From Salpingoeca rosetta (taxonomy: Eukaryota > Protista > Choanoflagellata), in the NCBI GenBank assembly GCA_033442325.1, contig JAWQFM010000023.1, positions 453,775 to 480,138 of the forward strand: a stretch of 26,364 nucleotides of DNA. The letters run 5' to 3'. The notes under the pieces were generated by a model, which saw only the letters and a program-made list of their open reading frames with translations, had not been told where the DNA came from and made no database searches. Position numbers and translations under genes: made by a program. This document shows positions 61-26,364 of the stretch, in pieces. Position 1 is the first letter of the stretch. Each line of letters starts with the position of its first letter.

Positions 61-64
<4 letters not shown>

Positions 65-5413: not shown

Positions 5414-5415
<2 letters not shown>

Positions 5416-5476
<61 letters not shown>
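5416..5476. repeat. (GT)n microsatellite upstream of the orphan ORF
   Basis: Pure GT run; reads (CA)n on the coding strand of the downstream - strand gene. Confidence 0.95.
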
Positions 5477-5479
<3 letters not shown>

Positions 5480-5739: not shown

Positions 5740-6141
5740 TCAGTAGTTCTTTGGCGCGGCCACGAAGGACCAGCTCTGCGCATCGCTGTCCTCGTCACAG
5801 GGCAGGATTTGCACGTCGTCCTGCTTGCCGCGGGTGAGGCAGTGTGTTGGCTGCAGCTTTGGCGAGAAGCGCTTCTCCTTGTGGATCCACATGTAGTCGT
5901 CCTGGTCTGGGGTGCACGCGCCCTGCCGCACGGCTAGCGAGAGCCCGATGTACGCGTCCGCCATGGTGGCGCTTGCCAAGTGGCCCTCTGCCAAGAAGGT
6001 GTGCGTGCACACGGCTCTGTGAGTGAATGTGTGCAAGCATGCATGTCACAGCCAAACGCAGGCAAGCCCGCACACGCGACCGCAGCCCACGTCATTGTAC
6101 ACAACCCTAAATACAGCCCACACCACACACACACACACACA

Positions 6142-6185
<44 letters not shown>

Positions 6186-7099: not shown

Positions 7100-7133
<34 letters not shown>

Positions 7134-7227
7134 CGTGTGTGTGTGTGTTTGTACGTGCTCTGCATTTTTGGAGACGACGCTATGGAAACTAACCCATTCA
7201 TCCCAACCATCCACCACTCATCACAAA

Positions 7228-7277
<50 letters not shown>

Positions 7278-8955
7278 ATACACACCTCTGCGACGCGAAT
7301 GTCGTTCCGGTCGAGGTAGTAGCCGACGTTGACGGACTTGAGCTTTGGGTCCACGCTAAAGCGGTTAAACTCGCGATAGATGTGCCCGACATTGGAGCAA
7401 GGAATCCACTCCATCGACCCGCCGCACTGCCACACGCGAAAGGACAGCTCCACGTGCTCGGCGCCGTAGTACTTGATCTCGGGATCGTACGCGCCCAGCT
7501 GAAAGAACAAGTCCTTGTCAATCGCAAACAGCCCTGCACGTTGTGCGTATGTGCGTATGTGCGTATGTGTGTGTGTGTGTGTGGTGGAAATTGAGCCCAT
7601 GTTACAGTATTACGTGACTCCACAATGAGGACGTGATCCACCGAGAAAAGGTGACATGCATTACTGCAGCCGACCATGACCGACCCCGACGACGCATGGC
7701 CTCGCCCGCCCCCTCACCCCACCCATCCCTCGCTCCCCGGCACACCCACAGCACGCACAACGTCATGTAGCAAACCCCCGCACTAACCTCCTGGCATGAC
7801 GGGGCTTCTGATGGGGCGCGTGTGTGGGTGACCATCGCCAACAAGATCGCGGTCGATGTTTGCGGGCACAATGGTGAAGGTGAGGCGCCAGTTGAAGCTG
7901 CCCTTGGCGGGCGGCCACAGCTCGCCGGGGAAGAGGTCCAGCTTGTCCAGGTCGATGCCGCGGATGTTGGGCACGACCACGCGCGTGCGGTCTTCGTGGA
8001 TGCGGGCAACCAGGGGCTCGATCCACCCGGGCGACACCTCACTGTGGCTATCGAGGAAGACGAGGATCGGGTGGGACGCCTCCTGCGCCCCGCGCACGCG
8101 CGCCCCGACAATCCCGTCGTGCACGTGCCGGTGGAAGAGCTTGATCATGCCGTCCGGGACCTTGAGCTTCTTCAGGTGCTTTGGGAGCAGCTGCAGCTCT
8201 GGCAGCGTGCTGTTGTCGTCGATGAGCAGAATCTCGCCAAGCAGCTCGGGCGGGGTGCGGTTGAGCACGCTCACGACGTTGCGCAGCAGCGTGGACAAGG
8301 GCTCGTTGTAATAAATGATGATGACGCTGGACTTGGGCATGCCCCTGGGGTACGTGATGGCCTTGCACTCGTCTGACCGGATATCAGGCACATCGTGGGC
8401 GAGCGGCAGCTCGTTGGACTTTTTCAGGTTGAACCCATACTGCCTGTACATGGACTCGCGCGAGTTGAGGATGGGGTCGTCGCGGATGTTCTTTGGCAGG
8501 TCCAGCTCAAGATGCACCGGCTGCCACCAGGCACCGCCACCAGCAGCAGCAGCAACTGCGCGTTGTTGTTGCTGCCCTTGCTGCTGCTGCTGTTGTTGTT
8601 GCTGCTCTTCTTGCTTTCGTTTGAGCTGCGCCTCGGCTTCTGCCTGCCATTGCCGTTCTTGCAGCTGCCGCTCCTTCTCCGCGTTCTCCGCCTCCAGCTT
8701 TTGCTGCTGCGCAAGCATGTCCTGCTTTGCTTGCATTCGACGCAGATCCTCCAGCACAGGCGCATCGTCCCCTTGTCCCCTTGGCACCACACCATTGCCA
8801 CCACTGCCACCATCGCCAGTGCCAGTGCCAGTGCTAGTGCTGCTGCCGCTGCCGCTGCTGCTGCTGTTGTTGTTGTTGTTCAGCGTGCGCAGCCCAAGCA
8901 GCACCACCACCACCACAGCAAGCAACACCAGCTCCCGCTTCCGCGCACCTCGCAT
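5740..8955 (-). CDS. Polypeptide N-acetylgalactosaminyltransferase (GT27/GALNT family), type II membrane protein, ~800 aa. Exons 8955-7788, 7533-7286, 7037-6299, 5987-5740
   Basis: N-terminal signal anchor MRGARKRELVLLAVVVVVLLGL, Q-rich stem, GT-A motifs SVIIIYYNE, EILLIDDNS, FLDSH, SPVMPG|GLFAID, ELSFRVWQCGG, VAE|VWMDEYK and CRSFKWYLDNV, then ricin-B (CL..C..QxW) repeats. Splice phases 1,0,1 give 2403 nt = 801 codons. Confidence 0.93.
6121..6285. repeat. Compound (CA)n/(CACAC)n/(CACACG)n microsatellite in GalNAc-transferase intron 3
   Basis: Directly visible; UG-rich on the transcribed strand next to the donor at 6298. Confidence 0.9.
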
Positions 8956-9059
8956 ATCTTGGGTTCCTATATCAGGGCCGATGGCCGGGATTTGTACTGA
9001 AAATAGGCAATTCACACCAAGTGGCTGATATCTTCCACCACCTTTCCTCTGGTTTGACC

Positions 9060-9073
9060 GTTCGCTTGGCAAC
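9060..9073. promoter_or_regulatory. RFX X-box in the divergent promoter between the GalNAc-transferase and the dynein gene
   Basis: GTTCGCTTGGCAAC (reverse complement GTTGCCAAGCGAAC) matches the 14-bp X-box GTTGCCATGGCAAC with one perfect half-site. It lies ~390 nt upstream of a ciliary gene ATG and just before a CA-rich 5'UTR-like tract. Confidence 0.7.
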
Positions 9074-9466
9074 CAATCTTCCTCAACAACACATACAACC
9101 ACTACATCCGTGCACCGCCACAACACCACAACACCAACCAACAACATTTTCAACTGAACAACCCACCACCACCACCATCACCGCGACGATATTGATTGAC
9201 GTGTTGTGATTCTCTCTGACCAGGTGGGGGCTCCAGAACAAGCAAGGAGGGGTCCGAGCACACACACGCACACACACGCACGCACACGCACACACACGCA
9301 CACACACGCACGCACCCACGCACGCGCAACGCGCAGCGATCGAGGCTGGGTGAAGAACGGTCAAGGGTATTCCTTCATTCATTCACTCAATTCATCGTCG
9401 CGACACCCTGCAAGCAAGCAGCACACACCAACACCAGCAGATAGTTGGCCCAGCCACAAAAAAAAA

Positions 9467-12400
9467 ATGGCTGATACAGAACAACAACCCGCAACAGAGC
9501 AGCCGCCTCCAAAGCCCGTGGAGGCGGAGGAGCAGGAGCAGCAAGCCGACGCACAGCCTGCACAGGAGGCGACTACCGCTTCTACCGAAGATGCGCCTGC
9601 AAACGCAGAGACGGCAAACGAGGAGCAGGACGTGAAGGAGAATGAGAATGGTGACGCGGCAACAGAGGAGGCCAAGACAGAGGAGAAGGAGGACGGTGAG
9701 GCGACTGAGGACAAGAAGGAGGATGGCGGCAGTGAAACTACCGAGGAGGCCAAGACCGACGCAGACGCTGAAGCTGAGGCCGAAGCTGCTGAGGAGGCCA
9801 AGACAGACGCAGACGCAGACGCAGACGCCGACGCAGACGCTGAGGCTGAGGCCGAAGCTGCTGAGGAGGCCAAGACAGACGCAGACGCTGCCAACGCCGA
9901 CGCAGACGCAGAGGCAGACGCAGACGCTGCCAACGCCGACGCAGACGCTGAGGCAGACGCCGCCACCACTGAGGAGGCCAAGACAGACGCAGACGCTGAG
10001 CCGGACGCCGAAGCTGCTGAAGCAGAACAGGAGGAGTCCAAGACTGAGGGTGAGAGCACGGATGAGAAGCCAGCAGCCGATGCAGCCGAGGCATCCACAG
10101 AGGCTACCCCACAAGAGGAACAGTCTGCAGAAGCCAAGACAGAGGAGCCTGCTCCGGCTCCTGAGGCTGAACCTGAGCCTGAGCCCGAGACAGAGGCAGA
10201 GGTGATTGCGAGGGAACAGGCAGCCGTCGCTGTCAAGCGGAGGGAAATCCGCTCCCTTCCTCGTCCTCCAGAGGGCGGTCAGTCCATTGTGTGTGTGTGT
10301 GTGTGTGCGTATCTGCTGTATGTGTGTGTGTGTGTTGTAAGTGTTTTGCACCTGTCAACGTGTGGTCCTGCTTTGCCCCCCCCGTCCCTTCGCTGTTCAC
10401 CCTTCCGTTTGAGCATTCATATCCACCCCATCAGCCCACTCCACGTAAAACCCTAGCCCAATATTCACACTCGTAACATTTTCCCTGTCTTCTCCACACC
10501 TCCCCCCCCCTTGCTGCCCTGCTGCTCATTCTGTTCCTCTCCCCACCAACATCAGAGCGAAAGCACAACCCGCGCACGCGCAAGGCTGCCGCGCCCGTGA
10601 GCAAGTTCACGCGACGGGCACACAAGGTGGCTAAGCCGCAGGAGCGCATGAAGAGCAAGGTGGCCAACAAGGACAGCACCATGGAGGCGTCACACAAGAG
10701 CAAGGAGGCGCGCGCCGCCAAGGCCGCCAGCATGGACGCCCGCCACAAGTACATCATCTCCTGCGTCGCCGACCTCGTGCAGGAGGAGGCCGAGACAGTG
10801 GAGACGCAGGTGCTCGACGGCCCCGGGTTTGAGCAGTTTGACCAGTTCTTCGCCGCCAACCCGACGCGCCGCCAGCTCGTCTTCTTCTACCAGAACTTCC
10901 CCAACCGCAAGGGCGAGATGGAGAAGCGCGTGCAGATTGTCAACCCGGCCGTGGACCGGCTCACGGGCACGTGCGTCTACTGCGTGCGCGGCGCCTCCAC
11001 CCGCGCCCTCAGCACCAGCAACGTCGCGCAGGAGGTGACCTTTGGCCGGTTTGGCCTGGACAGGGCATCCGGCACCGTGCTTGGCGGCATGGAGTCGATC
11101 ATCGCCGACTTCCTCGAGCCCGCGCTCATGGCCAACGAGAACTGGGGCAAGATGGAGAAGGACGATGCGCAGCGTGAGGAGTTCTTCGACGCCCTGGAGC
11201 GGTTCCGCGCCACGCTGAGCGAGGCCAACGTTGCCGTGGCCACGCGCGTCGTGCTGCAGGCGTACGAGCCCAAGGAGGGCGAGCCCGCGCTGGAGCTGGA
11301 CAGCATGTCCGCCGCAGACGTCACGCGCATGTCGCAGGACCACAAGGCGACGGCGCAGCTGGAGGAGCTGGTGCAGCACTGGTGCACGCAGCTGGAGCAG
11401 GTGATTGCGGAGAGCGAGCAGATGCGCAAGGAGGCGGACGACGTCGGCCCCCGCGCCGAGCTGGAGCACTGGAAGCAGCAGATGGCCAAGTTCAACGGCG
11501 TGCTGGACCAGATGAAGGAGGCGCGCTGCCAGAACGCCGTCAACGTGCTGCACCTCGCCAAGTCGCGCCTCATCCCGGAGTGGCGCCGCCTCGAGGTGCG
11601 CATCACAGAGTCCGCAAACGAGGCCAAGGACAACGTCAAGTACCTGTCCACCCTCGACAAGTTCTGCGGGCCCCTGTACAAGAACAGCCCGCCGCAGATG
11701 ATGGAGTCGGTGCCCGCGCTCATGAACGCCGTGCGCATGATCCACTCCATCTCCGGCTACTACAACACGAGCGAGCGCATGACCGCGCTGTGCGTGAAGA
11801 TCACCAACCAGATGATCACCGCCTGCAAGCGCTACATCTACGAGAAGGAGCCCCGCATCTGGGACCAGGATCCCAAGGACCTCACCGCTCGCCTCAGCCA
11901 CGTACGGCCAGCCGTGCATGCTCTTTTGATGATTTGCGCATGTGGTAGCTTTGCATGTGTTGTATGTGTATCTGCACCCATACTTGTACGTCTGTGTCTG
12001 TGTCTGTGTGTGTCCGCGTGTCCAGAACTGTGCATGTACACACAGGAGCTCGCTGTTCCTTGCCACCACAGCATCGCGACGCTTCCCTCCAACCACCAAC
12101 CCACCCCAACAACAAACCCCCCGCCCCAACAACAACAACAACACCCCCCCCCCCACTCACACTAACACACACACACACACCACGCTCACGCACTGATAAC
12201 CGCCCCCCCCCCACACACACACAGTGCCGAGAGCTGAACCAGCACTACCAGCGGTGCTTTAAGCGGGAGAAGGAGAAGCTGCTGGCCACCCCAGAACGGC
12301 GGCAGTTTGATTTTTCGGAGATGTCCATCTTTGGCAAGTTTGACACGTTCTGCGCCCGCACGGAGAAGATTGTGCAGATGCTGGACATTATCGAGCGCTG

Positions 12401-15400
12401 GAGCAAGCTGAGCGCAAGCAAGATTGACGGCATCGAGCCCATCAACGTGCTCTTCCGCTCCCTCGTCAACAACTTCAAGAAGAAGCCGTACGACGTGCTC
12501 AACACGCGCCGCCGCGACTTTGACACAGACTTTGAGCAGTTCCAGAGCGACATCCAGGACCTGCTGCAGCGGCTGCAGGACTTTATGGACGACTGCTTTG
12601 CCCAGGCGCCGAGCGTCATGCGCGCCCTGGACCTCCTCACCAAGTTTGAGAAGATCAAGCACGTCGGCCTCGACCTCTCGGAGAAGTACGAGCTGGTGCT
12701 GCGCGCCTTTGGCAAGGAGCTCGAGGAGGTGCGCAAGGTGTACCAGGCGGAGAAGCAGGACCCCTCCATTGGCCGCAACCTGCCGCCGCTCGCCGGACGC
12801 ATCATCTGGGCGCGCCAGCTCTTCGCCCGCATCGAGGGCCCCATGTCCGTGTTCCAAAAGTCGTGCACCGACCTCCTTAAGACCGCCGACGCGCGCAAGG
12901 TGATTAAGCACTACAACAAGCTCGGGCACGTGCTGCTCGAGTACGAGCTGCTGCACCACCGCGCATGGTGGAAGGCGGTGGACGCCTCGCAGTCCGGCCT
13001 CAACGCCTCGCTCCTCGTGCGCCACCCGGAGACGGGCAAGCTCCTGGTCAACATGGACCCGCAGCTGCCGCAGGTCATCCGCGAGACGAAGATCATGCAG
13101 AAGCTCAACCTGGAGATCCCGGAGAGCGCCAAGCTGCTGTGCCTGCAGGAGGAGCGCCTGGCCAACCAGAAGAACCAGCTCGAGCTGATGATTGAGGAGT
13201 ACAACCGCGTGTTTTCCCGCATCCCGGAGCGCGTTGAGCACCTCCTGCGCTCCGCGCGCAAGGCCGTCGACAAGCAGGTGGAGCCCGGCGTGACGAAGCT
13301 GAGCTGGATGTCGCCCAACCTCGACCCGTACCTGCAGACGTGCTACGGCGCCCTGGCAGACTTTGAGAAGCTGCTCAAGGAGGTGGAGGATACGCTGCAG
13401 GTGCGCATCGACTCCGTGCTGGAGAACATCCGCAAGACGATGCTCGTCAAGCTACCGGAGGAGATGGCCTGGCCCTGCACGCAGTTTGTGGAGGAGACGG
13501 AGGCCCTCTGCGCCACGCGCACGGAGGAGCTGCAGCTGTCAAACAAGCTGGTGGAGCGGGCGGTGGACGAGCTCGTGGCCATGCTGCTCAAGAGCATGCT
13601 GCCGGAGGACCGCCAGTCCGAGCACACCCGCTCCGAGGTGGACAGCCTGCTCAGCCACTTCAACCACAGCGTCGTGGACGCCTTTGTGCGCTGCGTGCGC
13701 CGCAACCTAGAGGCCATCAAGAAGCGCCTCTCCCGCGCCCGCAAGGAGTACGACGAGAACACGGCAAAGTCGCCGCCGTGCTTCTCCGCCTCCATTGTGC
13801 TCGACATCCCAAACATCAGCATGACCCCGGCGCTGGACGACATCCAGAAGGCCGTCAACCAGGCCGTGCAGACGGTGATTGGCGTCACCCGCTCCATCAC
13901 CACGTGGAAGTCGCACCCCCTCGCCCGCGCTGCCCGCAACCACCACGGCAACGCGCAGCAGCAGCAGCAGCGGCAGCAGCGGCAGCAACAGCAGCAGGAA
14001 GGGGGAGACGCAGGTCAGGATGGCGCAGCGGAGGACGAGGAAGAGGACGATGAGGTGCGCAGCCGCGAGCGCGCGGCCCTCAGCGCCGTCGCCGAGGGCA
14101 ACATCTACCACATTGTGTCCGAGAACAAGGAGGTGGCGAAGAACGTGTCGTCGCTCTCGTCGGCCATCAACTCCACAAAGCAGGAGGTGACAGACGTGCT
14201 AGAGCGCCTCAGCAAATACAACCGCCTCTGGCAGGACAGCAAGGAGGACAAGACGGAGGAGTTCTTGGCAACGGAGCCCGACCTGTACGACTTTGAGGTT
14301 GCGGTGAAGGGGTACGAGGAGATTGAGAACGAGATCCTGGCGTTGCCGGAGACGTACCGCGTGAGCGCGATTGAGCTGGCCACGGACACGTTCAAGCAGG
14401 CCATGACGGCGGAGACGCGCGCGTGGAAGCAGGCGTACGGCCGTGGCCTTAACACCAAGGCGCTCAAGGACATGAACAGCATCTTTGAGTTCTGCGAGGA
14501 CCTGACCAAGCGGCTCTCGCGCAAGATTGTGGACCTGGAGGACGTGCGCATGGCGATGAACGCGCTCAAGGAGCTGCGCGAGGAGCAGATTCGCCTGGAC
14601 AACATGCTGGGCCCCATTGAGCAGTCGTACGCCATCCTCAGCAAGTACGACGTCGTGGTCCCGCGCACGGAGACGGAGCGCCTGGACACGCTCAACTACG
14701 AGTGGGACAAGCTGCTCGGCCTCTCCAAGCAGGTGCAGAACAACCTGATTGAGATTGCGCCCTCCTTCCGCGAGGGCCTCGAGTCGAGCGTGCAGAAGTT
14801 CACCCTGGAGGTGTCGTCCTTTGTCAACGACTATGACAGCAAAGGCCCCAACGAGGAAGGCATTGTGCCCGCGGAGGCCAGCGACCGGCTGGCCGTGTTC
14901 CAGGTGCGCTTCGATGACCTGTGGCGCCGCTACATCACGTACACGGGCGGCGAGGAGCTGTTTGGCCTGCCGCAGTCCGAGTACCCGGACCTGCCCCGCA
15001 TCAAGAAGGAGCTCGGCCTACTGCAGAAGCTGTACGGCCTCTACAACGACGTGCTCAAGACGATTGACGGCTACTACGACATTCAGTGGACGGCGGTCGA
15101 CATTGAGAAGATCAACTCGGAGCTGCTTGACTTTGGCAACCGCTGCCGCAAGCTGCCCAAGGCGCTCAAGGAGTGGCAGGCTTTCCACGAGCTGCGCAAG
15201 CGCATCGACGACTTCAACGAGACTTGCCCCTTGCTCGAGGCCATGTCCAACCCGGCCATGCTGCCGCGCCACTGGCAGCGCATCGCCGAGGCCACTGGCC
15301 ACACGTTTGACATTGAGTCTGAGAACTTCCTCCTGCGCAACATCATGGAGGCCGACCTGCTCAAGGCCAAGGAGGAGATTGAGGACATTTGCATTGCGGC

Positions 15401-18400
15401 GGTGAAGGAGCAGGACATTGAGGCCAAGCTGAAGAGCGTGGTGGCGGAGTGGTCTGCGCACGAGCTGTCGTTTATGACGTTCAAGAACCGCGGCGAGCTG
15501 CTGATCAACGCCGCCGAGATTGCCGAGCTCATGACGCTCATGGAGGACAGCCTGATGGTGCTGAGCTCCCTCATGAGCAACCGCTACAACGCGCCGTACA
15601 AGGCCGACATCCAGAAGTGGGTGCGCAACCTCTCCGACACCTCTGAGATTGTGGAGAAGTGGCTCATCGTGCAGAACCTGTGGGTGTACCTGGAGGCCGT
15701 ATTTGTGGGCGGCGACATTGCCAAGCAGCTGCCCAAGGAGGCGAAGCGCTTCTCCAACATTGACAAGTCGTGGCAGAAGATTATGACCCGCGCGCACGAG
15801 AACACCAACCTGGTGCAGTGCTGCACCGGCGACGAGACCATGAGCAACCTCCTGCCGCACTTGCACGAGCAGCTGGAGCTGTGCCAGAAGTCGCTGGTGG
15901 GCTACCTGGAGAAGAAGCGCCTGCTGTTCCCGCGCTTCTTCTTCGTGTCGGACACGGTGCTGCTGGAGATTCTCGGCCAGGCCAGCGACTCGCACACCAT
16001 CCAGGGCCATCTCCTCAACATCTTCGACAACATCAAGCAGGTCACCTTCCACGAGAAGGTGTACGACCAGATCCTGGCGTACTCGTCCAAGGAGGGCGAG
16101 ACAGTGCACATGCAGCGGCCCGTGATGGCGACGGGCAACGTCGAAACGTGGCTGGGCCAGTTCCTGGAGGAGCAGCGGCGCTCCCTCAACAGCGTCATCT
16201 GCGACGCCGCCGTGCAGGCGCTGGACCAGAACTTCCAGCTGATTGAGTTTGAGAACAGCTACCCGGCACAGGTTGGCATCCTCGGCATCCAGCTGCTGTG
16301 GACGCGCGATGCGGAGGTGGCGCTCAACAACGCCCGCCAGGACAAGAAGATCATGCAGCAGACCGACGACAAGTTCCTGCGCCTGCTCAGCGAGCTCATC
16401 AACGCAACGCTGCAGGAGCTGACAAAGGTTGACAGGACCAAGTTCGAGACGCTCGTCACCTTGCACGTGCATCAGCGCGATATCTTCCACGACCTCGTCG
16501 TCATGGGCATCAAGACGCCAATTGACTTTGAGTGGACCAAGCAGGCCCGCTTCTACTTCTTGGAGGAGGAGCGCAGAACAGCCGTCCACATCACCGATGT
16601 CATCTTCAACTACTCGCTCGAGTTTATCGGCTGCGTGGACCGCCTGGTCGTCACGCCGCTCACGGATCGCTGCTACATCACCCTTGCCCAGGCCCTCAAC
16701 CTGCACATGGGTGGCGCCCCTGCTGGTCCCGCCGGTACGGGCAAGACAGAGACCACCAAGGACATGAGCCGCTGCATCGGCAGGTGTGTGTGTATGTGTG
16801 TATGTGCAAGTGTGCGTGTGCGTGTGCGTGTGCGTGTGCGTGCGTATGTTTGGTTGGGAGCTTGTGAGGGGGGTGTGTGTGTGTGTGTGTGTGTGTGAAT
16901 GATCATCGTTTTGCTGGTATGGCACGTTGAAGAAGGGCGCTCGCTGATGGCCGTAAATCTCTCCCTCTCACCTCCCAATTCTCACTCGTTCGTTTGTACT
17001 CACACCACCCACAACCACACATGCGAATGTGATTGATGTGACAGGCTTTGCGTCGTTTTCAAGTACGGCCCTGTGGCGTCTTGTTTGGGTTCTTTTTTTG
17101 GGGGCGGGGGCGGGGAGCGGTCCTTTGCTTGATTTGGAGTGAACCACTCATGTGCTGCTGTGTTTTGCTGTTGTGTCATGCGCATGTCCGTGCCATTCAT
17201 CACTTGACCAACTCACCTCTGCTCGTTTTTCGTTACTTTGCGCCATGTATCGTCACATCACTTTGCACACGCGATTCACCCAACCCACCACAGCGTAAGT
17301 CATATGAATGTTGTCTGCATGCCGTGCACCGTCTGTAACGTGTTGTGGGTCAATTTTCATTGCATACTCGACTGGCTGCCGTGTGTCTGTTGTCATACCT
17401 CATCTCTTCTTGACACACCCACATTGACGCTTTGCTCACCATCACACCTTTCAACATGCAACCAACGCTTTGATCTTGCCACTGGCCCCCTTCCTTCTTT
17501 CTTTCATCGCCCGTCCCCATCTCTGCCCTCCTCCTCGATAGTGTAAGTTAGCCACATTGCGCACTTGTGCGTGCGCGTGTGCATGCTTGTGTGCGTGCGC
17601 GTGTGCATGATTGTGTGCACACACACATGCACACTCTGATTGCGGGGCTAGAAGCGCGTTTCTGCTAGTGTGTCAACAACGCCTTGCTTTCGTTGCCCTG
17701 ACGCCGTTTTTCTGCTTTCCTTTGTTTCCACAACACAACTGCACCATTGCCCTCCACCTCTACCACCACTACCACCACGACCAGGCTCTGATCAAATGGA
17801 CTTCCGTGGCCTGGGCCGCATCTACAAAGGCCTGGCGCAGTCTGGCGCGTGGGGCTGCTTTGACGAGTTCAACCGCATCGAGCTGCCCGTGCTCTCTGTT
17901 GCGGCGCAGCAGATTGCCATTGTGCTCACGGCCAAGAAGGAGCGCCGCAAGAACTTCATTTTCATGGACGGCGACGACGTGTCGCTCAACCCGGAGTTTG
18001 GCCTCTTCCTGACCATGAACCCCGGGTACGCCGGGCGCCAGGAGCTGCCGGAGAACCTCAAGATCCAGTTCCGCTCCGTGGCCATGATGGTGCCTGACCG
18101 CCAGATTATCATCCGCGTGAAGCTTGCCAGCTGCGGTTTCCAGAACAACGTCGTCCTGGCGCGCAAGTTCTTCACCCTGTACAAGCTGTGCGAGCAGCAG
18201 CTGTCCAAGCAGGTGCACTACGACTTTGGCCTGCGCAACATCCTGTCTGTCCTGCGCACGCTCGGCCCGGAGAAGCGCAAGAACCCGGACGATGGCGAGA
18301 CGACCATTGTCATGCGCGTGCTGCGAGACATGAACCTGTCCAAGCTCGTGGACGAGGACGAGCCGCTCTTCATGTCGCTCATCACCGACTTGTTCCCCGG

Positions 18401-21400
18401 CATCGAGCTGGAGACGGTAACGTACCCGGACATGCAGGACGCCATTCAGAAGCACGCAGACGAGGCCAACCTCGTCAACCACCCGGCCTGGAACCTCAAG
18501 CTCGTGCAGCTGTTTGAGACGCAGCGCGTGCGCCACGGCTTCATGGTGCTCGGCCCGAGCGGCGCCGGCAAGACCACCAACATCCACACGCTGATGAAGG
18601 CCATGACGGAGTGCGGCACGCCGCACAAGGAGTACCGCATGAACCCCAAGGCCATCACGGCGCCGCAGATGTTCGGGCGCCTGGACGTGGCCACCAACGA
18701 CTGGACCGACGGCATCTTCAACGTGCTCTGGCGCCGCACCCTCAAGGGCAAGAAGGGCGAGAAGACGTGGATTGTGCTGGACGGCCCCGTTGACGCCGTG
18801 TGGATTGAGAACCTCAACAGTGTGCTGGACGACAACAAGATGCTCACGCTGGCCAACGGCGACCGCATCCCCATGTCCCCGGACGCCAAGCTCGTGTTTG
18901 AGCCGCACAACATCGACAACGCGTCGCCGGCCACCGTCTCGCGCAACGGCATGGTCTTCATGTCGTCCTCCGTGCTGGACTGGCGGCCCATCCTCGAGGG
19001 CTGGTTCAAGCGCCGCTCCGCCAGCGAGAGCGACGTGCTCCGCGGCATGTTCGACCTCTGCTTCGACGACACCCTCACGTACGTGCGCACGAGCCTCAAC
19101 CCGCGCATGACGCTGCTGGAGTGCAACTACATCAAGCAGGCCATCGACCTGCTGACGGGCCTCATCCCCAACGGCGAGCAGGAGGGCTCCGACGGCCACG
19201 GCGCAGAGCCGCTCTCCGCCGAGCACCTGCGGCGCCTGTTCATCTTCGCCATCATGTGGTCCCTCGGTGCGGTGCTGGAGCTGGACGACCGCGCGCGCCT
19301 GCAGGAGTTCCTGCACTCCCTGTCCGGGGACCTCCCGCTGCCAAAGACAACGGGCGAGGAGACCATCTTCGAGTACATGGTCAACGAGCAGGGCGAGTGG
19401 GAGCACTGGAGCAAGCGCGTGGAGCCGTACGACTACCCGCGCGACCCGAACGAGCCCACGCCGGCGTTCCGCAGCATCCTCGTGCCCAACATCGACAACG
19501 TGCGCAGCGAGTTCCTGCTGCACACCATTGCCAAGCAGCACAAGTCTGTGCTGTTTATTGGCGAGCCCGGTACGGCGAAGACGGTCATCACCAAGGGCTA
19601 CTGCAAGAAATTCAACCCCGAGGAGCACCTGTGGAAGTCGCTCAACTTCTCGTCCACGACGCACCCCAACGGCTTCCAGCGCACCATTGAGTCGTACGTG
19701 GAGAAGCGCATGGGCACCACCTTTGGGCCGCCCGGTGGCAAGGCCATGGCCGTGTTCATCGACGATATCAACATGCCCATCATCAACGAGTGGGGCGACC
19801 AGATTGCCAACGAGATTGTGCGCCAGGTCATGGCCGAGAGCGGCTTCTACTCGCTGGACAAGCCCGGCGACTTCATCACGCTGGCGGACATGCAGTACCT
19901 CGCCGCCATGCCGCACCCCGGTGGCGGCCGCAACGACATTCCGGAGCGCCTCAAGCGCCGCTTCTCCGTGTTCAACTGCACGCTCCCGGCCAACGTGTCC
20001 ATCGACCTCATCTTCCGCACCATCGGCAACGGCTGGTTCTGCCCCGAGCGCGGCTTCACCCCGGACGTGGTGCAGATGGCGGACCAGCTGGTGTACCTCA
20101 CGCGCAAGATGTGGCAGGACACCAAGGCCAAGATGCTGCCCACGCCGGCCAAGTTCCACTACGTGTTCAACCTGCGCGACGTGAGCCGCATCTGGGAGGG
20201 CATGCTGCTCATCCAGCCGGAGGAGTGCGACTCCGTGCAGGCCCTGCTCAACCTGTGGAAGCACGAGTGCACGCGCGTCCTCGCCGACCGCTTCACGGAG
20301 AAGAAGGACGTGGCGTGGTTCCAGCAGCGCATCCAGCAGGTGATTGCCTCTGAGCTCGGCGACGAGTACGCCAACCTCACCGACGAAGAGCCGTTCTTCG
20401 TCGACTTCCTGCGCGAGGCGCCCGAGCCGACGGGCGAGGAGGGCGAGGAGGAGGCCGACCTGGAGGCGCCCAAGGTCTACGAGAAGGTCCCCGACCTGGA
20501 CACGCTTGAGGCCAAGCTCAAGGAGTACATGCAGCTGTACAACGAGACGGTCCGCGGCGCCAAGATGGACCTCGTCTTCTTCCGCGACTGCATGATCCAC
20601 CTGGTGCGCGTGTCGCGCATCATCCGCATCCCGCAGGGCAACGCCATGCTGGTCGGCGTCGGCGGCTCCGGCAAGCAGTCTGTCACGCGCCTGGCCACCT
20701 CCATTGCCGGGTACAAGGTGTTCCAGATCCAGCTCAGCCGCTCGTACAATGCCAACAACCTGATGGAGGACATCAAGCAGCTGTACCAGATTGCGGGCGT
20801 CAAGGGCCAGGGCCTCACCTTCATCATGACCGACAACGAGATCAAGCAGGAGGGCTTCCTCGAGTACATCAACAACCTGCTGGCCACGGGCGAGATTGGC
20901 GGCCTGTTTGCCCGCGACGAGATTGACGAGATTTGCGGCGAGCTCATCCCCGTGATGAAGAAGGAGTTCCCGCGCCGCCCGCCCACAAACGAGAACCTGT
21001 ATGACTACTTTATCAACCGCGTGCGCAACAACCTGCACGTTGTACTGTGCTTCTCCCCCGTGAGCGAGAAGTTCCGCACGCGTGCCCTCAAGTTCCCCTC
21101 GGTGTTTGCGGGCACGAACATGGACTGGTTCATGGCGTGGCCGCGCGACGCGCTAGTGGCCGTGGCCGACCACTTCCTCAGCGACTTCCACGTCGTGTGC
21201 ACGAACGACGTCAAGGGCGCCATGGTGGAGACGATGGGTGTGGTGCAGGACCGCGTCGGTGCCGCGTGCGACGACTACTTCCAGCGCTTCCGCCGTCAGA
21301 CGTACGTGACCCCGGCGTCGTACCTCTCCTTCCTCAACTCGTACAGGCACCTGTACTCGGACAAGAAGGAGCACTTTGAGAACCTGCGCCAGCGCATGCA

Positions 21401-24400
21401 GACGGGCCTGGACAAGCTGCTCGAGGCGTCCGAGTCTGTGGCGCAGCTGAGCGAGGAGCTCGTGGTGAAGGAGAAGGACCTGGCCGTGGCCTCGGAGGAG
21501 ACGGAGCGCGTGCTGCAGGAGGTGTCGCAGAGCGCCGCCGCCGCAGAGAAGGTCAAGTCCGAGGTGCAAAAGGTCAAGGACAAGGCGCAGGAGATTGTGG
21601 ACACCATCGACAAGGACAAGAAGGTGGCTGAGAAGAAGCTGGCCGCGGCCGTGCCTGCGCTGGCCGCGGCCGAGAGGGCGCTGGAGACGATCAAGCCCGC
21701 CGACATTGCCACGGTGAAGAAGCTGGGCAAGCCGCCGCACCTCATCATGCGCATCATGGACGCCGTGGTGATTCTGTTTGGGCGCAAGCTGGACCCCGTG
21801 GTGCCGGACCCGGAGCGGCCCTGCCCGACGCCCTCGTGGAAGGAGTCCCTCAAGACCATGAACGGCCCACTGCTAAGCGAGCTGGTCAACTTTGACAAGG
21901 ACACCATCAACGACGAGATGGTGGAGCTGCTTGAGCCGTACCTGGGCATGGAGGACTACAACATCGACCAGGCCAAGCGCGTGTGCGGCAACGTGGCTGG
22001 CCTGCTCTCGTGGACGGAGGCCATGGCCACCTTCTTCGGCATCAACAAGGAGGTGCTGCCGCTCAAGGCCAACCTGGCCGTTGCCGAGGCGAAGCTCAAG
22101 GTGGCGCAGGGCGAGTTGGCGGAGGCGCAGGGCGAGCTGGACGCCAAGCAGGCCGAGCTGGACGTGGTGCAGGCGCGCTACGACGCCGTGATGAAGAAGA
22201 AGCAGGAGCTGCAGGCGGACGCGGAGACGTGCCGGCGCAAGATGGCCTCTGCCTCTGCCCTCATCGGCGGCCTCAGCGGGGAGAAGGTGCGTTGGACGCA
22301 GCAGGCCAAGGAGTTTGAGGCGCAGATCAACCGGCTCGTCGGCGACGTGCTGCTCATGTGCGCCTTCATGTCGTACTCTGGGCCCTTCAACAACGAGTTC
22401 CGCACGCTGCTGCTCAGCGGGTGGCGCAAGGAGCTGGAAACGCGCACCATCCCCTTCACCAAGTCCCTCAACATTGTGGAGAACCTGGTGGACAACGCGA
22501 CCATTGGCGAGTGGGGCCTGCAAGGGCTTCCCAACGACGAGCTGTCGCTGCAGAACGGCATCATCGTCACCAAGGCCACGCGCTATCCGCTGCTGATTGA
22601 CCCGCAGGGCCAGGGCAAGGCGTGGATCAAGAACCGCGAGGCGAAGAACGAGATGCTGGTCACCACGCTGGACCACAAGTACTTCCGCACGCACCTGGAG
22701 GACGCCCTGTCGCAGGGCCGCCCGCTGCTGATTGAGGACGTGGTGGAGGAGTTGGACCCGTGCCTGGACAACGTCCTGGACAAGAACTTTATGAAGGCCG
22801 GTTCCACGTACAAGGTCAAGGTTGGCGACAAGGAGGTTGACATTATGGACGGCTTCATGCTGTACATCACCACCAAGCTGCCCAACCCGACGTACACGCC
22901 CGAGGTGTTTGCGCGCACGTCCATCATCGACTTCACCGTGACCATGAAGGGCCTGGAGGACCAGCTCCTGGCCAAGGTGATTCTCACGGAGAAGGCCGAG
23001 TTGGAGACGGAGCGCGTTGCGCTGGTGACGGAGGTCACGGCCAACAAGAAGAAGATGAAGGAGCTCGAGGACAACCTGCTGTACCGCCTGAGCAACACCA
23101 AGGGCTCGCTGGTCGACGACGAGAGCCTGATTGAGGTGCTGCAGGTGACGAAGACGACGGCAGAGGAAGTGAACGAGAAGCTGGCGGTGGCCGCAGACAC
23201 GGAGCTGAAGATCAACACCGCCCGTGAGGAGTACCGGCCCGTGGCCACGCGCGGGTCCATTCTGTACTTCCTCATTGTGGAGATGTCCATGGTCAACCCC
23301 ATGTACCAGACGTCGCTGGACCAGTTTTTGGGCATCTTCGACTTCAGCCTGGCGCACTCTGAGAAGTCGCCCGTGCCCATGAAGCGCATTGCCAAGATTA
23401 TCGAGTACATGACCTTTGTGGTGTTCAAGTACACGAGCCGCGGCCTGTACGAGAAGGACAAGTTCCTCTTCACCATCCTCCTCGCCCTCAAGATTGACCT
23501 GCAGCGCGGCAACGTGAAGCCAAACGAGTTTATGACGTTCATCAAGGGTGGTGCCGCGCTGGACCTCAACTCCGTGCAGCCCAAGCCCAAGTCGTGGATC
23601 CTCGACTCGACGTGGCTCAACCTGGTGCAGCTGAGCGAGCTGCCCATGTTCGCCGACATTCTCAACCAGGTGTCGCGCAATGACAAGGCTTGGCGCGCGT
23701 GGTTTGACGAGGACGTGCCCGAGGAGGCGCCGCTGCCGGACGGCTACGAGAGCACGCTCGACGTGTTCCGCCGGCTGCTGCTGGTGCGCTCGTGGTGCCC
23801 GGACCGCACGCTGGCGCAGGCGCGCAAGTACGTGGCCTCGTCACTTGGCCAGCGCTATGCCGACGCCGTGCTGCTTGACATGGAGGAGATGTACGGGGAG
23901 AGCGACGTGCGCACACCGCTGGTTGGCCTGCTGTCCATGGGCGCGGACCCGACGGGCGCCATCCAGCACCTGGCCAAGCTCAAGAAGGTGGAGTGTCGCG
24001 AGGTGTCCATGGGCCAGGGTCAGGAGGTGCACGCGCGCAAGCTCATCTCGGACTTCCAGCAGAACGGCGGGTTTGCGCTGCTGCAAAACTGCCACCTTGC
24101 CCTCGACTTTATGAACGAGGTCCTCGACACGGTGAAGACGGCGGAGAACGTCAACCCGGCGTTCCGACTGTGGGTGACCACGGAGGTGCACCCCAAGTTC
24201 CCCATCAATCTGCTGCAGTCGTCGATCAAGTTCACCAACGAGCCGCCGCAGGGCATCAAGGCCAACCTCAAGCGCACGTACGCGGACGTGACCCAGGACC
24301 AGCTGGACATCACCAACCTGCCCCAGTGGAAGCCCATGCTGTACGGCGTGGCATTCCTGCACGCCATTGTGCAGGAGCGGCGCAAGTTTGGCCCCCTTGG

Positions 24401-25667
24401 CTGGAACATCCCCTACGAGTTCAACCAGGGTGACCTGCTTGCCTCGTTCCAGTTTGTGCAGAACCACCTGGACGACATTGACCCGAAGAAGGGCGTGGCG
24501 TGGCCCACGGTGCGCTACATGCTGTCGGAGGTGCACTATGGCGGGCGCGTGACGGACGACCGCGACAAGCGCCTTCTCATCACATACTGCACGCTGTGGT
24601 TTGGCGAACACATGTTCAAGGACGACTTTGCCTTCTACAAAGGCTACGAGATTCCCAAGTGCGCCAAGATTGACGAGTTCCGCGACCACATCAGCCATCT
24701 CAACACTTTTGACGGGCCCGAGGTCTTTGGGCTGCATCCAAACGCGGACATCACGTACATGACCAACACGGCGCAGAACGTGCTGGCCACAATTGTTGAC
24801 ATCCAGCCCAAGGAGAGCGCTGCCTCCGGTGGCGAGACGCGCGAGGACGCCGTCAAGCGCCTGTGCAAGGAGTTCCAGCAGAAGCTGCCAGACGACTTTT
24901 TGCCGCACGAGGTCAAGGCGCGCCTGCGCAAAATGGGTGCCACCAACCCCATGAACATCTTCCTGCGGCAGGAGATTGACCGCATCCAGCGCGTCATCAC
25001 CCTCGTCCGCACCACCCTGTCCGACCTGCTGCTGGCCATTGACGGCACCATCATCATGAGCGAGACGCTGCGCGACGCCCTCGACAACATGTACGACGCG
25101 CGCGTGCCCAAGGCCTGGTCGGCCATCTCCTGGACGTCCATGACGCTGGGTTTCTGGTTTACGGAGCTGATTCTGCGCCACCAGCAGTTCCACAGCTGGT
25201 GCTTCCAGGGCCGCCCCGCGGCCTACTGGCTCACGGGCTTCTTCAACCCGCAGGGCTTTATCACGGCCATGCGACAGGAGATCACCCGCGCGCACAAGGG
25301 CTGGGCGCTGGACAGCGTTGTGTGCTGCAACGACATTACCAAGATGGCCGGCAAGGAGGATGTCAAGGAGCCGCCCAAGGAGGGCGTGTACATCTACGGC
25401 CTCTTCCTCGATGGCGCTGGCTGGGACAAGCGCAACAGCCAGCTCACAGACCCGCCACCCAAGGTGCTCTACACCCCGCTGCCTGTGCTGCACCTCTCCG
25501 CCATCAATTCCACCGCCGATCGTGACAAGCGCCTGTACGAGTGCCCCGTGTACCGCAAACCGCGCCGTACCGACCTCGAGTTTGTCACCATGGTTGACCT
25601 CAAGACCCCAGTGCCCCCAGAAAAGTGGATTCTGCGCGGTGTCGCCTTGCTTTGTGACACCAAGTGA
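9467..25667 (+). CDS. DNAH5: Axonemal outer-arm dynein heavy chain (DNAH5/DNAH8 type, gamma-HC class), ~4872 aa. Exons 9467-10277, 10556-11901, 12225-16783, 17045-17062, 17294, 17542, 17785-25667
   Basis: P1 GPAGTGKT (16725-16748), Walker [12 protein letters not shown]2 GPSGAGKT (18552), P3 GEPGTAKT (19560; DNAH5/8-like), P4 GVGGSGKQ (20655), stalk/MTBD coiled coil, tail motif ELEHWK, C-terminus [13 protein letters not shown]. Exon sum 14619 nt = 4873 codons. Attachment of exon 1 rests on phase compatibility (G|AG). The symbol denotes the DNAH5/8 clade, not a resolved one-to-one ortholog. Confidence 0.95.
9660..10150 (+). repeat. Coding minisatellite: EEAKT(DA)n(EA)n repeats in dynein exon 1
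   Basis: gaggaggccaagac recurs at about 9665, 9743, 9791, 9863 and 9971, with degenerate copies at ~10030 and ~10130, separated by (gacgca)n and (gaggct)n runs. Confidence 0.85.
17045..17062 (+). CDS. 18-nt microexon of the dynein heavy chain, encoding (R)LCVVF(N)
   Basis: acag|G CTT TGC GTC GTT TTC AA|gtacgg; it completes AG|G = Arg from exon 3 and supplies the conserved xxVVF strand after the AAA1 P-loop. Confidence 0.93.
17294..17294 (+). CDS. Single-nucleotide exon (C) completing the Asn codon AA|C of the dynein FNC motif
   Basis: ccacag|C|gtaagt: CAG at 17291-17293, perfect GTAAGT donor at 17295-17300; needed for frame and motif. Confidence 0.85.
17542..17542 (+). CDS. Single-nucleotide exon (T) starting the Cys codon T|GC of the dynein FNC motif
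   Basis: Pyrimidine tract ~17486-17536, then gatag|T|gtaagt: TAG at 17539-17541, GTAAGT at 17543-17548. The next exon starts cag|GC TCT GAT CAA ATG at 17785. Confidence 0.83.
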
Positions 25668-25706
25668 AGCGAAGGGAGAGGAATCCACACGTGTTTGCGT
25701 TTGCGT

Positions 25707-25708
<2 letters not shown>

Positions 25709-25785
<77 letters not shown>
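25709..25785. repeat. (GT)n microsatellite just downstream of the dynein stop codon
   Basis: Pure GT run starting ~40 nt after TGA 25665-25667. Confidence 0.95.
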
Positions 25786-25787
<2 letters not shown>

Positions 25788-26364
25788 TACTGCTTGTGTT
25801 TTGTTTGCATGTGTGAGAAGTACGAATGATTGAAACGAAGAAAGGCATGCAAGCAATGGCAAGGAGGAAGGCAGTGTGTGGGGTGTGCTAAAACTATGAT
25901 AACGTCCTATAAATGTTTGTGAAATGAGCTCCCTTTCTTCTGAATGTTAGCGAAAACAGAAGATAGCAACGCAACGTGGTGACGTGGCAGTGTTTGTTGA
26001 GAGTTGTGTGGTTATGTGGTGTGTTATGCAAGAGCATGTAACATCGAGCAACCACACAAGCTAAACACTGCACGTGCAACAGGTTGGAGGGAAATCACGT
26101 GAACATTCCAGAACACAAGAGAGGTGAATGTGAATTTGTGGTGTCGTGAAGAAGGGAGGTCAATGATGACTCAGCAGACAGGACTTGCCTGTCAACACTC
26201 CCCCGCATTGACCTACCTCTCTGCTGCGTTGATGTTCTGAAACGTGATGAGCATGTGGATGATGTCATGCATGTAGTGTTGAGATTCAGTGAGTTTCTGT
26301 TCTGTGTTAAGTCCTTCCTAATTTGCCTTCGCGTGTGGTTTTGTCTTGTTTGCCAACGGTGCGC

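What the first reader, a model, noticed from the sequence alone, without database searches (positions are those of the whole stretch)
17285..17550. Perfect GTAAGT donors at the 1-nt exons suggest ordered, recursive (ratchet-like) splicing that adds one base per step
Seen: both 1-nt exons are followed by the full U1-complementary GTAAGT, while none of the other donors I assigned in the window has it (gtgtgt, gtacgg, gtacgt, gtaacg, gtccgt, gtgagg, gtcagt, gttagt, gtgaga). Inference: a 1-nt exon cannot be bound by 3' and 5' splice-site machinery at once, so the introns are probably removed sequentially by intron definition. Each ligation would create a new exon end (TTCAAC|GTAAGT, then TTCAACT|GTAAGT), analogous to AG|GT recursive splice sites but leaving a coding base behind.
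Basis: partly seen in the sequence, partly recalled or inferred. Interest (0 to 1): 0.8.

Follow-up and report, generated by a model that had tools for sequence, protein, structure and literature searches.

The report
Two tandem one-base exons, spliced downstream-first

Summary
AG|C|GTAAGT (C at 17294) and AG|T|GTAAGT (T at 17542) lie in the roughly 1 kb that splits an outer-arm (DNAH5-like) dynein heavy chain gene. RNA reads from three studies show mRNA with exactly CT between 17062 and 17785. One intermediate pins the C to 17294. The T is placed at 17542 by inference; the rival site 17669 is far weaker. Chance is excluded: 0 of 20,000 shuffles give such a path with GTAAG(T) donors.

Stepwise removal is plausible, and was already proposed for the Arabidopsis 1-nt exon. 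The predicted 5'-to-3' intermediates were not seen. The only intermediate found keeps the upstream intron (17063-17293) while both GTAAGT introns are gone. Sense-strand intron depth runs I2 > I3 >= I4. That fits downstream-first splicing, as reported for other microexons.

GTAAGT has a simpler reason. A 1-nt exon fixes donor positions -3 to -1 as A, G, N, so no exon-side U1 pairing is possible. Six intron matches bring these donors to 6 of 9, the same as seven other-type donors checked here would need (five others score 6-7).

Relatives lack these introns. Two tandem 1-nt exons appear unreported. The scan noted this same stretch under two other ids, and a further 1-nt exon elsewhere in this genome.

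The parts
12225..16783 (+). Giant upstream coding exon of the outer-arm (DNAH5-like) dynein heavy chain. It ends ...[19 protein letters not shown] + AG, the first two bases of an Arg codon.
   Evidence: Open frame. Donor CAG|GTGTGT at 16784. The X6 RNA contig runs from 16733 through the junction into 17785 with exactly 25 letters between 16778 and 17785, which equals 5 + 18 + 2 (table 8).
16784..17044 (+). Intron 1 (261 nt). It is GT-repeat rich at its 5' end. The donor is CAG|GTGTGT and the acceptor is gtgacAG.
   Evidence: RNA depth is about 0 over 16911-17011. Positions 16779-16907 were skipped by the reads tool as repeats, so its joint is not listed directly.
17045..17062 (+). 18-nt microexon G CTT TGC GTC GTT TTC AA, coding (R)LCVVF(N).
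   Evidence: RNA joints start at 17062. Loose ends read TTGCGTCGTTTTCAACT before 17785 (table 7).
17063..17293 (+). Intron 2 (231 nt), donor CAA|GTACGG, acceptor ccaccacAG. It is the most retained of the four introns and is still present in the one intermediate seen. Retaining it gives a stop after 23 further codons.
   Evidence: sense-strand depth is 1.3-4.1 here, against 0-1.5 in introns 3 and 4. The joint 17294->17785 has at least 37 nt of this intron attached. An X4 contig covers 17116-17294 at depth 7.5. Translation.
17294..17294 (+). 1-nt exon C, the third base of the Asn codon AAC in VVFNCSD.
   Evidence: Flanked by AG and GTAAGT. Three RNA reads join 17294 to T and then 17785 (tables 5 and 5c). 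The mRNA carries CT at this point.
17295..17541 (+). Intron 3 (247 nt), donor AGC|GTAAGT, acceptor cctcgatAG. Positions -40 to -3 are 82% pyrimidine. There is no AG anywhere in its 239-nt interior.
   Evidence: An AG-free interior arises in 11 of 20,000 mononucleotide shuffles. An X4 contig covers 17307-17538 at depth 3.6 and nothing covers 17539-17718.
17542..17542 (+). 1-nt exon T, the first base of the Cys codon TGC. Its placement is inferred. The rival site is T at 17669 (ctAG|T|GTGTCA).
   Evidence: The T in the mRNA is contiguous with neither side (table 5c). Only 17542 and 17669 are AG-T-GT sites. Site 17542 has 6 of 9 U1-consensus matches against 2 of 9, a 240-nt against a 12-nt AG-free stretch upstream, and pyrimidine content of 0.82 against 0.53. 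Coverage breaks near 17539 in X4 and X21.
17543..17784 (+). Intron 4 (242 nt), donor AGT|GTAAGT, acceptor cacgaccAG. A candidate branch site CTGAC lies at 17698, and 114 nt before the acceptor are AG-free.
   Evidence: The acceptor at 17784/17785 is used by all joints. Intron depth is 0 in X21 and X4, and 0.3-1.6 in X20.
17785..25667 (+). Giant downstream coding exon, starting GC TCT GAT CAA ATG GAC (=(C)SDQMDF...) and running to the stop codon.
   Evidence: Open frame. RNA depth is 30-90 with first mates on the minus strand, meaning sense RNA in a stranded library. It is 75-89% identical to DNAH5/8-type dyneins over its first 500 residues.

Best explanation
This is a real pair of consecutive single-nucleotide spliceosomal exons, C at 17294 and T at 17542. 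They lie inside an outer-arm dynein heavy chain gene and supply the last base of Asn and the first base of Cys in the invariant VVFNCSD segment of AAA1.

In a 1-nt exon, donor positions -3 and -2 are the A and G of the preceding acceptor, and -1 is dictated by the codon. The exon half of the donor therefore cannot pair with U1 (inference from the universal U1 5' end). Perfect GTAAGT on the intron side restores pairing to 6 of 9, the same level as ordinary donors in this window.

Removal is stepwise, but not 5'-to-3'. Shown: the two GTAAGT introns can be spliced out while intron 2 is still in place. Inferred: this fuses C and T onto the 7.9-kb downstream exon and turns the intron 2 acceptor into an ordinary acceptor in front of a long exon. 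Intron 2 goes last. The relative order of introns 3 and 4 is not shown.
For: -: the mature joint 17062-CT-17785 is seen in 23 reads and one contig from independent studies.
- the intermediate 17294-T-17785, with at least 37 nt of intron 2 attached, is seen in 3 reads from 2 start places.
- strand-specific intron depth is about 1.3-4.1 for I2, 0-1.1 for I3 and 0-1.6 for I4. X4 contigs give 7.5 for I2, 3.6 for I3 and none for I4.
- no joint of the upstream-first kind was listed.
- U1-consensus matches are 6, 7 and 6 for I0-I2, 6 and 6 for I3 and I4 (all six on the intron side), and 7 and 6 for the two GalNAc-transferase donors.
- 0 of 20,000 shuffles give two GTAAG(T) 1-nt exons.
- the spliced product reads [28 protein letters not shown], matching every orthologue.
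- Literature: strong GTRAGT donors are conserved at plant 1-nt exons (PMC8831610). Downstream-intron-first splicing, and the U1/U2 steric argument, are described for microexons (PMC10250204). The potato invertase mini-exon loses its downstream intron first, as cited in PMC4674806.
Against: - The intermediate rests on 3 reads in one run, plus low intron coverage.
- Steady-state polyA-type RNA shows what accumulates, not the flux. The intron 2-retaining species could be a dead-end or detained transcript rather than an on-pathway intermediate.
- Intron 1 could not be scored because repeats were masked.
- X20 shows slightly more coverage in I4 than in I3.
- The position of the T exon is inferred, not read directly.
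- The compensation argument uses only seven donors from one window, and the U1 sequence of this organism was not seen.
Confidence: 0.6

Rival explanations
1. This is an ordered 5'-to-3' ratchet: intron 2 goes first, creating TTCAAC|GTAAGT. Intron 3 then goes, creating TTCAACT|GTAAGT, and intron 4 goes last. One coding base is added to the upstream exon at each step.
For: The AG|N|GTAAGT layout resembles fly ratchet points, which are AG|GTAAGT with strong regenerated donors (PMC8605326). Transcription order would favour it. Depth is too low to exclude a minor route.
Against:: neither predicted joint reached 3 reads in any of four runs. The opposite intermediate was found, with intron 2 in and introns 3 and 4 out. 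Intron 2 is the most retained, whereas a 5'-to-3' order predicts intron 4 should be. The introns are about 240 nt, not the tens of kilobases where recursive splicing is described.
Confidence: 0.08
2. There is no fixed order. The four introns are removed independently at different rates, and intron 2 is simply the slowest. GTAAGT only compensates for the missing exon-side pairing and sets no sequence of events.
For: The equal 6-7 of 9 donor complementarity explains GTAAGT without any ordering. X20 shows some I4 coverage without I3 coverage. Three reads cannot establish obligatory order.
Against: A U1 site 1 nt from an acceptor AG makes simultaneous recognition of both sides unlikely. This is the steric argument in PMC10250204 and PMC4674806. 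Graded retention of I2 > I3 > I4 in X21 and X4 looks nested rather than independent.
Confidence: 0.25
3. The T comes from 17669 (ctAG|T|GTGTCA) rather than 17542. In that case only one 1-nt exon has a GTAAGT donor.
For: 17669 is the only other AG-T-GT site between 17295 and 17784. No listed read crosses either candidate junction with an intron retained.
Against: - Its donor has 2 of 9 consensus matches, against 6-7 for every other donor.
- Two AGs lie within 17 nt upstream of its acceptor, and the pyrimidine fraction is only 0.53.
- In X4, coverage at depth 3.6 stops at 17538 and is nil across 17539-17718. This fits an intron boundary at 17542.
- GTAAGT directly after AG-T at 17542 would then be an unexplained coincidence.
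Confidence: 0.05
4. Artefact. On this reading the gap is an assembly error or the gene is a pseudogene, and the CT belongs to a paralogue's mRNA.
For: Paralogous dynein mRNAs do cross-map to the conserved P-loop region. They account for the loose ends at 17819, 17832 and 17879 and the variants at 17828-17861.
Against: The joint reads carry the window-specific 18-nt exon sequence (TTGCGTCGTTTTCAACT) and fit both flanks exactly. Intron sequence is found in sense-strand RNA and in contigs from several studies. The intermediate links unique intron 2 sequence to C-T-exon.
Confidence: 0.02

Closest known systems
Single-nucleotide exons of plant APC11 and VPS55 (Guo & Liu 2015, PMC4674806; Yu et al. 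2022, PMC8831610) and of Fusarium CYP621A (PMC12940212)
   Same: One coding base is flanked by AG and GT, is needed for the reading frame of a conserved motif, is missed by annotation, and is confirmed by RNA reads. Plant VPS55 1-nt exons carry a conserved GTRAGT donor. Stepwise removal of the two flanking introns was proposed for APC11.
   Different: Here two such exons stand in tandem, next to an 18-nt microexon, so four introns sit within 20 coding bases. The host is not a plant or a fungus; its best protein matches are unnamed protist-type sequences and animal DNAH5/8. The introns are absent from the closest relatives found. A splicing intermediate gives some direct evidence on the order of removal.
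Downstream-intron-first splicing of microexons (Insplico, PMC10250204; potato invertase 9-nt mini-exon as cited in PMC4674806; the exon-intron-exon unit model for the troponin I mini-exon, Sterner & Berget 1993, recalled from memory)
   Same: The exon is too short for U1 and U2/U2AF to sit on both sides at once. A strong 5' splice site drives removal of the downstream intron first, and the upstream intron goes afterwards. The intermediate seen here is of that type.
   Different: Those exons are 3-51 nt, and many depend on SRRM4. Here the exon is 1 nt, there are two in a row, and splicing is constitutive. No trans-factor is known, and the order of introns 3 and 4 is unresolved.
Recursive splicing at ratchet points, the '0-nt exons' AG|GTAAGT of Drosophila and vertebrates (PMC8605326; bioRxiv 10.1101/006163; PMC6224609)
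   Same: The acceptor and a strong donor are juxtaposed, and removal is stepwise.
   Different: Ratchet points lie in very long introns, leave nothing in the mRNA, work 5'-to-3' by regenerating a donor, and need a cryptic downstream RS-exon. Here the introns are about 240 nt, a coding base is kept, and the observed intermediate runs the other way.
Spliceosomal twin introns (stwintrons) of fungi (recalled from memory)
   Same: Consecutive splicing reactions are needed at one tightly packed site.
   Different: In a stwintron an internal intron interrupts a splice signal of the outer intron, and nothing is left between them. Here each intron has its own complete GT...AG, and the bases between them stay in the mRNA.

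Membership tests
Single-nucleotide spliceosomal exon | The mRNA holds a base that is contiguous with neither flanking exon in the genome. | tested here: met
   table 5c: CT lies between 17062 and 17785 in 23 reads and one contig. T lies between 17294 and 17785 in 3 reads.
Single-nucleotide spliceosomal exon | The base lies in the genome between an acceptor AG and a donor GT, inside the gap. | tested here: met
   AG|C|GT at 17294 and AG|T|GT at 17542. No 2-nt CT exon candidate exists. The C is placed directly by the intermediate. The T is placed by exclusion of 17669.
Single-nucleotide spliceosomal exon | The base is required for the reading frame of a conserved protein segment. | tested here: met
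   with C and T the product reads VVFNCSDQMDF, as in all orthologues. Skipping either or both shifts the frame.
Single-nucleotide spliceosomal exon | Changing the genomic base changes the mRNA base (the mutational proof used for APC11). | not testable with these tools
   This needs a minigene or genome edit.
Recursive splicing ratchet point | Acceptor and donor are directly juxtaposed (AG|GT), with nothing retained in the mRNA. | tested here: not met
   One base lies between AG and GT at both sites, and it is kept in the mRNA.
Recursive splicing ratchet point | 5'-to-3' stepwise removal, with intermediates in which the upstream exon is joined to the regenerated donor. | tested here: not met
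   no joint 17062->17294 or 17062-C-17542 was listed in four runs. The opposite intermediate was found. Depth is modest, so a rare route is not excluded.
Recursive splicing ratchet point | It sits within a very long intron and depends on a cryptic downstream RS-exon. | tested here: not met
   The introns are 231-261 nt. Dependence on an RS-exon was not tested.
Downstream-intron-first microexon splicing | Partly processed transcripts have the downstream intron removed and the upstream intron retained. | tested here: met
   17294|T|17785 with intron 2 attached. Intron depth runs I2 > I3 >= I4. Read numbers are low.
Downstream-intron-first microexon splicing | A strong 5' splice site follows the microexon. 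| tested here: inconclusive
   The intron side is perfect at 6 of 6. Overall complementarity is 6 of 9, equal to other donors and not above them.
Stwintron | An internal intron interrupts a splice signal of the outer intron, and the signal is rebuilt by the first splicing. | tested here: not met
   All four introns have intact GT...AG ends of their own.

The most novel reading that the evidence does not exclude
The four introns form an obligatory backward cascade, I4, then I3, then I2, with I1 early. Each splice lengthens the downstream exon by one base and so unmasks the next acceptor. The last step, intron 2, acts as a detained-intron gate on production of a 13.6-kb dynein mRNA. Retaining intron 2 gives a stop after 23 codons. 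This would be a natural 'reverse ratchet' of splicing, built recently in this lineage, because close relatives have no intron here.
Probability: 0.25. Interest if true: 0.75.

Novelty: new variant of a known kind. Interest (0 to 1): 0.6.

Why it matters
One-base exons are the limiting case for splice-site recognition, because acceptor and donor signals overlap physically. The papers I could find describe only single cases, in plants and Fusarium. Their order of intron removal has been argued, not observed.

This locus has two such exons in a row in a highly expressed gene, and public RNA data already hold an intermediate. It is a compact natural substrate for three questions:
- Must the donor side be used first?
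- How much U1 pairing does a donor need when the exon side contributes none?
- How do such arrangements arise, given that sister lineages lack the introns?

It also matters for annotation. Gene callers will break or mis-join this dynein.

Tried and rejected
- **2-nt CT exon.** None exists. The only AG-NN-GY sites hold CG and AA.
- **Other 1-nt sites.** C at 17655 (AG|C|GC) would leave a 13-nt intron before 17669, and the intermediate contradicts it. The path T17542 + T17669 would give TT, not the CT that is observed.
- **Origin by tandem duplication or an introner family.** Introns 2, 3 and 4 show no similarity to each other beyond chance (z <= 1.7). Only GT/GTGC microsatellites are shared between I0, I1 and I4 and the rest of the window.
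- **Conservation in relatives.** The closest relative is L001, a genomic contig with two other introns. It is 86% identical over the 139-residue junction peptide and 89% over the first 500 residues of the downstream exon. It reads straight through GTCGTCGTGTTCAATTGCTCTGAC. L003 is also uninterrupted. L002 has a single intron 8 nt downstream of the intron 1 position and nothing at the FN|C sites. Conservation therefore could not be used to place the T exon.
- **Joints 16682->17844 and 16762->17819, and several loose ends.** These are paralogous dynein mRNAs cross-mapping to the conserved P-loop region, not isoforms of this gene.
- **X4 contig ending at 17294.** Two further letters of it do not fit the genome, but their identity is not shown. 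I did not count it as a second sighting of the intermediate.
- **Genome-wide enrichment of GTAAGT after YAG-N.** Not testable from one window. The other 1-nt exon noted in this genome lies on a piece I could not read.
- **A second read-laying run.** I could not collect more intermediates from X5, X7-X11 or X22.
Full report
**What is at the site**

The + strand of the window carries an outer-arm, DNAH5/DNAH8-like axonemal dynein heavy chain gene. Two very large open exons, about 12225-16783 and 17785-25667, are separated by about 1 kb in the AAA1 P-loop region. The first 500 residues of the downstream exon are 75-89% identical to dynein heavy chains of unnamed protist-type sequences and of animals.

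The upstream exon ends ...[19 protein letters not shown] plus AG. The downstream exon starts GC TCT GAT CAA ATG GAC. Between them lies an 18-nt exon, 17045-17062 (G CTT TGC GTC GTT TTC AA). To read the invariant VVFNCSDQMDF, two more bases are needed: C or T, and then T.

The sequence offers AG|C|GTAAGT at 17292-17300 and AG|T|GTAAGT at 17540-17548. There is no 2-nt CT exon candidate.

**Is it more than chance?**

AGNGTAAGT occurs only at these two places in 26.4 kb on both strands, against 0.22 expected. I shuffled 17063-17784 20,000 times, preserving dinucleotides. About 10% of shuffles offer some AG-[C/T]-GT ... AG-T-GT path. None offers one with GTAAG or GTAAGT at both donors.

**RNA evidence**

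I laid two raw stranded RNA runs (X20, X21) and contigs of two further runs from other studies (X4, X6) on 15800-18800. Exon depth is 15-90 with first mates on the minus strand, which means sense RNA for a + strand gene in a usual stranded library.

- The joint 17062->17785 carries the extra letters CT in 9 reads (X20), 14 reads (X21) and an X6 contig of depth 94.
- Loose ends read CTGCTCTGATCAAATGGAC behind 17062 and TTGCGTCGTTTTCAACT before 17785.
- The X6 contig has exactly 25 letters between 16778 and 17785, equal to 5 + 18 + 2. The whole mature structure is therefore confirmed.
- Three X21 reads, from two start places and with up to 37 letters on the shorter side, join 17294 to 17785 with a T in between.

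Those three reads contain intron 2 sequence running into the C at 17294, then T, then the big exon. This places the C exon directly. It also shows molecules in which introns 3 and 4 are gone while intron 2 is still present.

**Where the T comes from**

Only two AG-T-GT sites exist downstream of 17294: 17542 and 17669. No listed read crosses either junction with an intron retained, so the placement is inferred. The comparison favours 17542:

| Feature | 17542 | 17669 |
|---|---|---|
| Matches to CAG\|GTAAGT | 6 of 9 | 2 of 9 |
| AG-free stretch before the acceptor | 240 nt | 12 nt |
| Pyrimidine fraction, -40 to -3 | 0.82 | 0.53 |

In X4, intron coverage at depth 3.6 runs from 17307 to 17538 and is nil from 17539 to 17718. 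This fits an intron boundary at 17542. I put 17542 at about 0.9.

**Order of removal**

Neither joint (17062->17294, or 17062-C-17542) reached the listing threshold of 3 reads from 2 start places in any of the four runs. The listing share was set at 1 read in 100. The one intermediate listed is the opposite kind.

Intron coverage is all on the sense strand, so it comes from pre-mRNA rather than DNA:

| Run | I2 | I3 | I4 |
|---|---|---|---|
| X21 | 3.7-4.1 | about 1 | 0 |
| X20 | 1.3-2.9 | 0-0.4 | 0.3-1.6 |
| X4 contigs | 7.5 | 3.6 | none |

Intron 1 shows 0-0.8 where it is not masked as repeat.

Intron 2 is thus the last or slowest to go. The two GTAAGT introns are removed independently of it and usually before it. 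This contradicts an obligatory 5'-to-3' ratchet and fits a downstream-first route.

There are caveats. The numbers are small. Steady-state RNA shows accumulation, not flux. The intron 2-retaining species could be a dead end, since it has a stop after 23 codons. The order of intron 3 relative to intron 4 is not resolved.

**Why GTAAGT**

In a 1-nt exon, donor positions -3 and -2 are the A and G of the acceptor, and -1 is fixed by the codon (C or T here). None of the three can match the CAG that pairs with U1. I counted matches to CAG|GTAAGT over -3 to +6 (splice sites):

| Donor | Sequence | Matches of 9 |
|---|---|---|
| I0 | CAC\|GTACGG | 6 |
| I1 | CAG\|GTGTGT | 7 |
| I2 | CAA\|GTACGG | 6 |
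| I3 | AGC\|GTAAGT | 6 (0 exon side + 6 intron side) |
| I4 | AGT\|GTAAGT | 6 (0 exon side + 6 intron side) |
| GalNAc-transferase, first | GAG\|GTTAGT | 7 |
| GalNAc-transferase, second | GAG\|GTGTGT | 6 |

The perfect hexamers therefore do not make these donors stronger than the others. They bring them up to the ordinary level. This explains the observation without any ratchet. It rests on seven donors and on the universal U1 5' end, which is established knowledge; this organism's U1 was not seen.

A U1 site 1 nt from the acceptor AG would also be expected to compete with U2AF for that AG. This would favour use of the donor first. That step is inference, in line with the argument in PMC10250204.

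**Other anatomy**

- Intron 3 has no AG in its 239-nt interior. This arises in 11 of 20,000 mononucleotide shuffles.
- Introns 1, 2 and 4 have 107-152 nt AG-free stretches before their acceptors.
- The best branch-like motifs (YTGAY) lie 68-97 nt upstream of each acceptor. They are candidates only.
- The four introns are of similar length (261, 231, 247 and 242 nt).
- Apart from shared GT-type microsatellites (I0, I1, I4), they show no mutual similarity, so there is no sign of recent duplication or of an introner family.

**Relatives**

- L001 is a genomic contig from another species. It is 86% identical over the 139-residue junction peptide and 89% over the first 500 residues of the downstream exon. 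It shares the window's intron at about 11902-12224 and has a further 5' intron that the window lacks. It reads straight through GTCGTCGTGTTCAATTGCTCTGAC.
- L003 is also uninterrupted.
- L002 has one intron ending 8 nt downstream of the intron 1 position, and nothing at the FN|C sites.

The cluster is therefore lineage-specific. Either it was gained in this lineage, or the relatives lost it together through a cDNA-mediated event. These data cannot tell which.

**Comparison with what is known**

- Nuclear 1-nt exons are documented for Arabidopsis APC11 (PMC4674806), plant VPS55 (PMC8831610) and Fusarium CYP621A (PMC12940212).
- Guo & Liu already argued for one-after-the-other removal. They cite the potato invertase mini-exon as losing its downstream intron first.
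- Yu et al. note the conserved GTRAGT donor at VPS55 1-nt exons.
- Insplico (PMC10250204) reports downstream-first splicing for most SRRM4-dependent microexons and gives the steric U1/U2 argument.
- Fly ratchet points need a cryptic RS-exon and leave nothing behind (PMC8605326).

The mechanism class is therefore known. New here are two 1-nt exons in tandem, with four introns in 20 coding bases, outside plants and fungi, together with a sighted intermediate. I found no report of tandem 1-nt exons in the papers searched. That is absence in a limited library, not proof.

The scan noted this same stretch under two other ids, and noted a further 1-nt exon in a PARP gene on another piece of this genome. 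I could not read that piece.

**Verdict**

The best reading is compensation of lost exon-side pairing by a perfect intron-side donor, with the GTAAGT introns removed before the upstream intron.

Noticed in passing
window 17301-17539: The whole interior of intron 3 (239 nt) contains no AG dinucleotide. This arises in 11 of 20,000 mononucleotide shuffles. It looks like selection against cryptic acceptors between the two 1-nt exons.
   Followed up: partly
window 16944, 17204, 17470, 17698: The best branch-site-like motifs (YTGAY) of introns 1-4 all lie far from their acceptors, 68-97 nt upstream, and are followed by long AG-free, C-rich tracts. A distant branch point would keep U2 away from the crowded 1-nt exon. 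These are candidates only.
   Followed up: no
L001:150-690 and L001:1945-2150, against window 10560-12224: The closest relative's genomic contig shares the window's intron at about 11902-12224. It has an extra intron after ...KVTKPQ near the 5' end that the window lacks, and it lacks all four AAA1 introns. Intron turnover between these lineages is therefore brisk.
   Followed up: partly
L002:1-175: An activated-sludge metagenome relative has a T/GT-rich intron ending at ...AAAAAG|TCGTGTTCAAC. That is 8 nt downstream of the window's intron 1 position, so a second and different intron position exists in the same few codons.
   Followed up: partly
window 17063-17293: Intron 2 is 231 nt, which is 3 x 77, so it is in frame. 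It carries a TGA after 23 codons. The retained form seen in RNA is non-productive and could be a detained-intron or NMD-type control point.
   Followed up: partly
window 16644-16762 and 17819-17879: RNA reads and contigs of other dynein heavy chain paralogues cross-map to the conserved P-loop/AAA1 coding sequence. This produces apparent variants (17828 A>G, 17841 T>A, 17843 T>A, 17861 T>C), loose ends, and two false 'joints' (16682->17844, 16762->17819).
   Followed up: partly
window 11902 and 17063: Two dynein donors share the unusual hexamer GTACGG, as CAC|GTACGG and CAA|GTACGG. Donors in this window have a weak +3 to +6 consensus, but all five ordinary ones keep A at -2.
   Followed up: no
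window 1-120, 2595-2645, 5410-5480, 6120-6290, 7100-7275, 9260-9335, 16784-16900, 25700-25790: Long GT/CA microsatellites fill introns and spacers all over the window. They forced the reads tool to mask the 5' part of intron 1.
   Followed up: no
window 5934-9153, minus strand: A polypeptide GalNAc-transferase-like gene with a ricin-type C-terminal part is split by at least two introns. Their donors are GAG|GTTAGT at 7787 and GAG|GTGTGT at 7285. It was used here only as a source of comparison donors.
   Followed up: partly
P0001: The top-scoring database protein (4,295 aa, metaclust) carries protein kinase Pfam hits in addition to the dynein domains. It may be a chimeric gene model.
   Followed up: no
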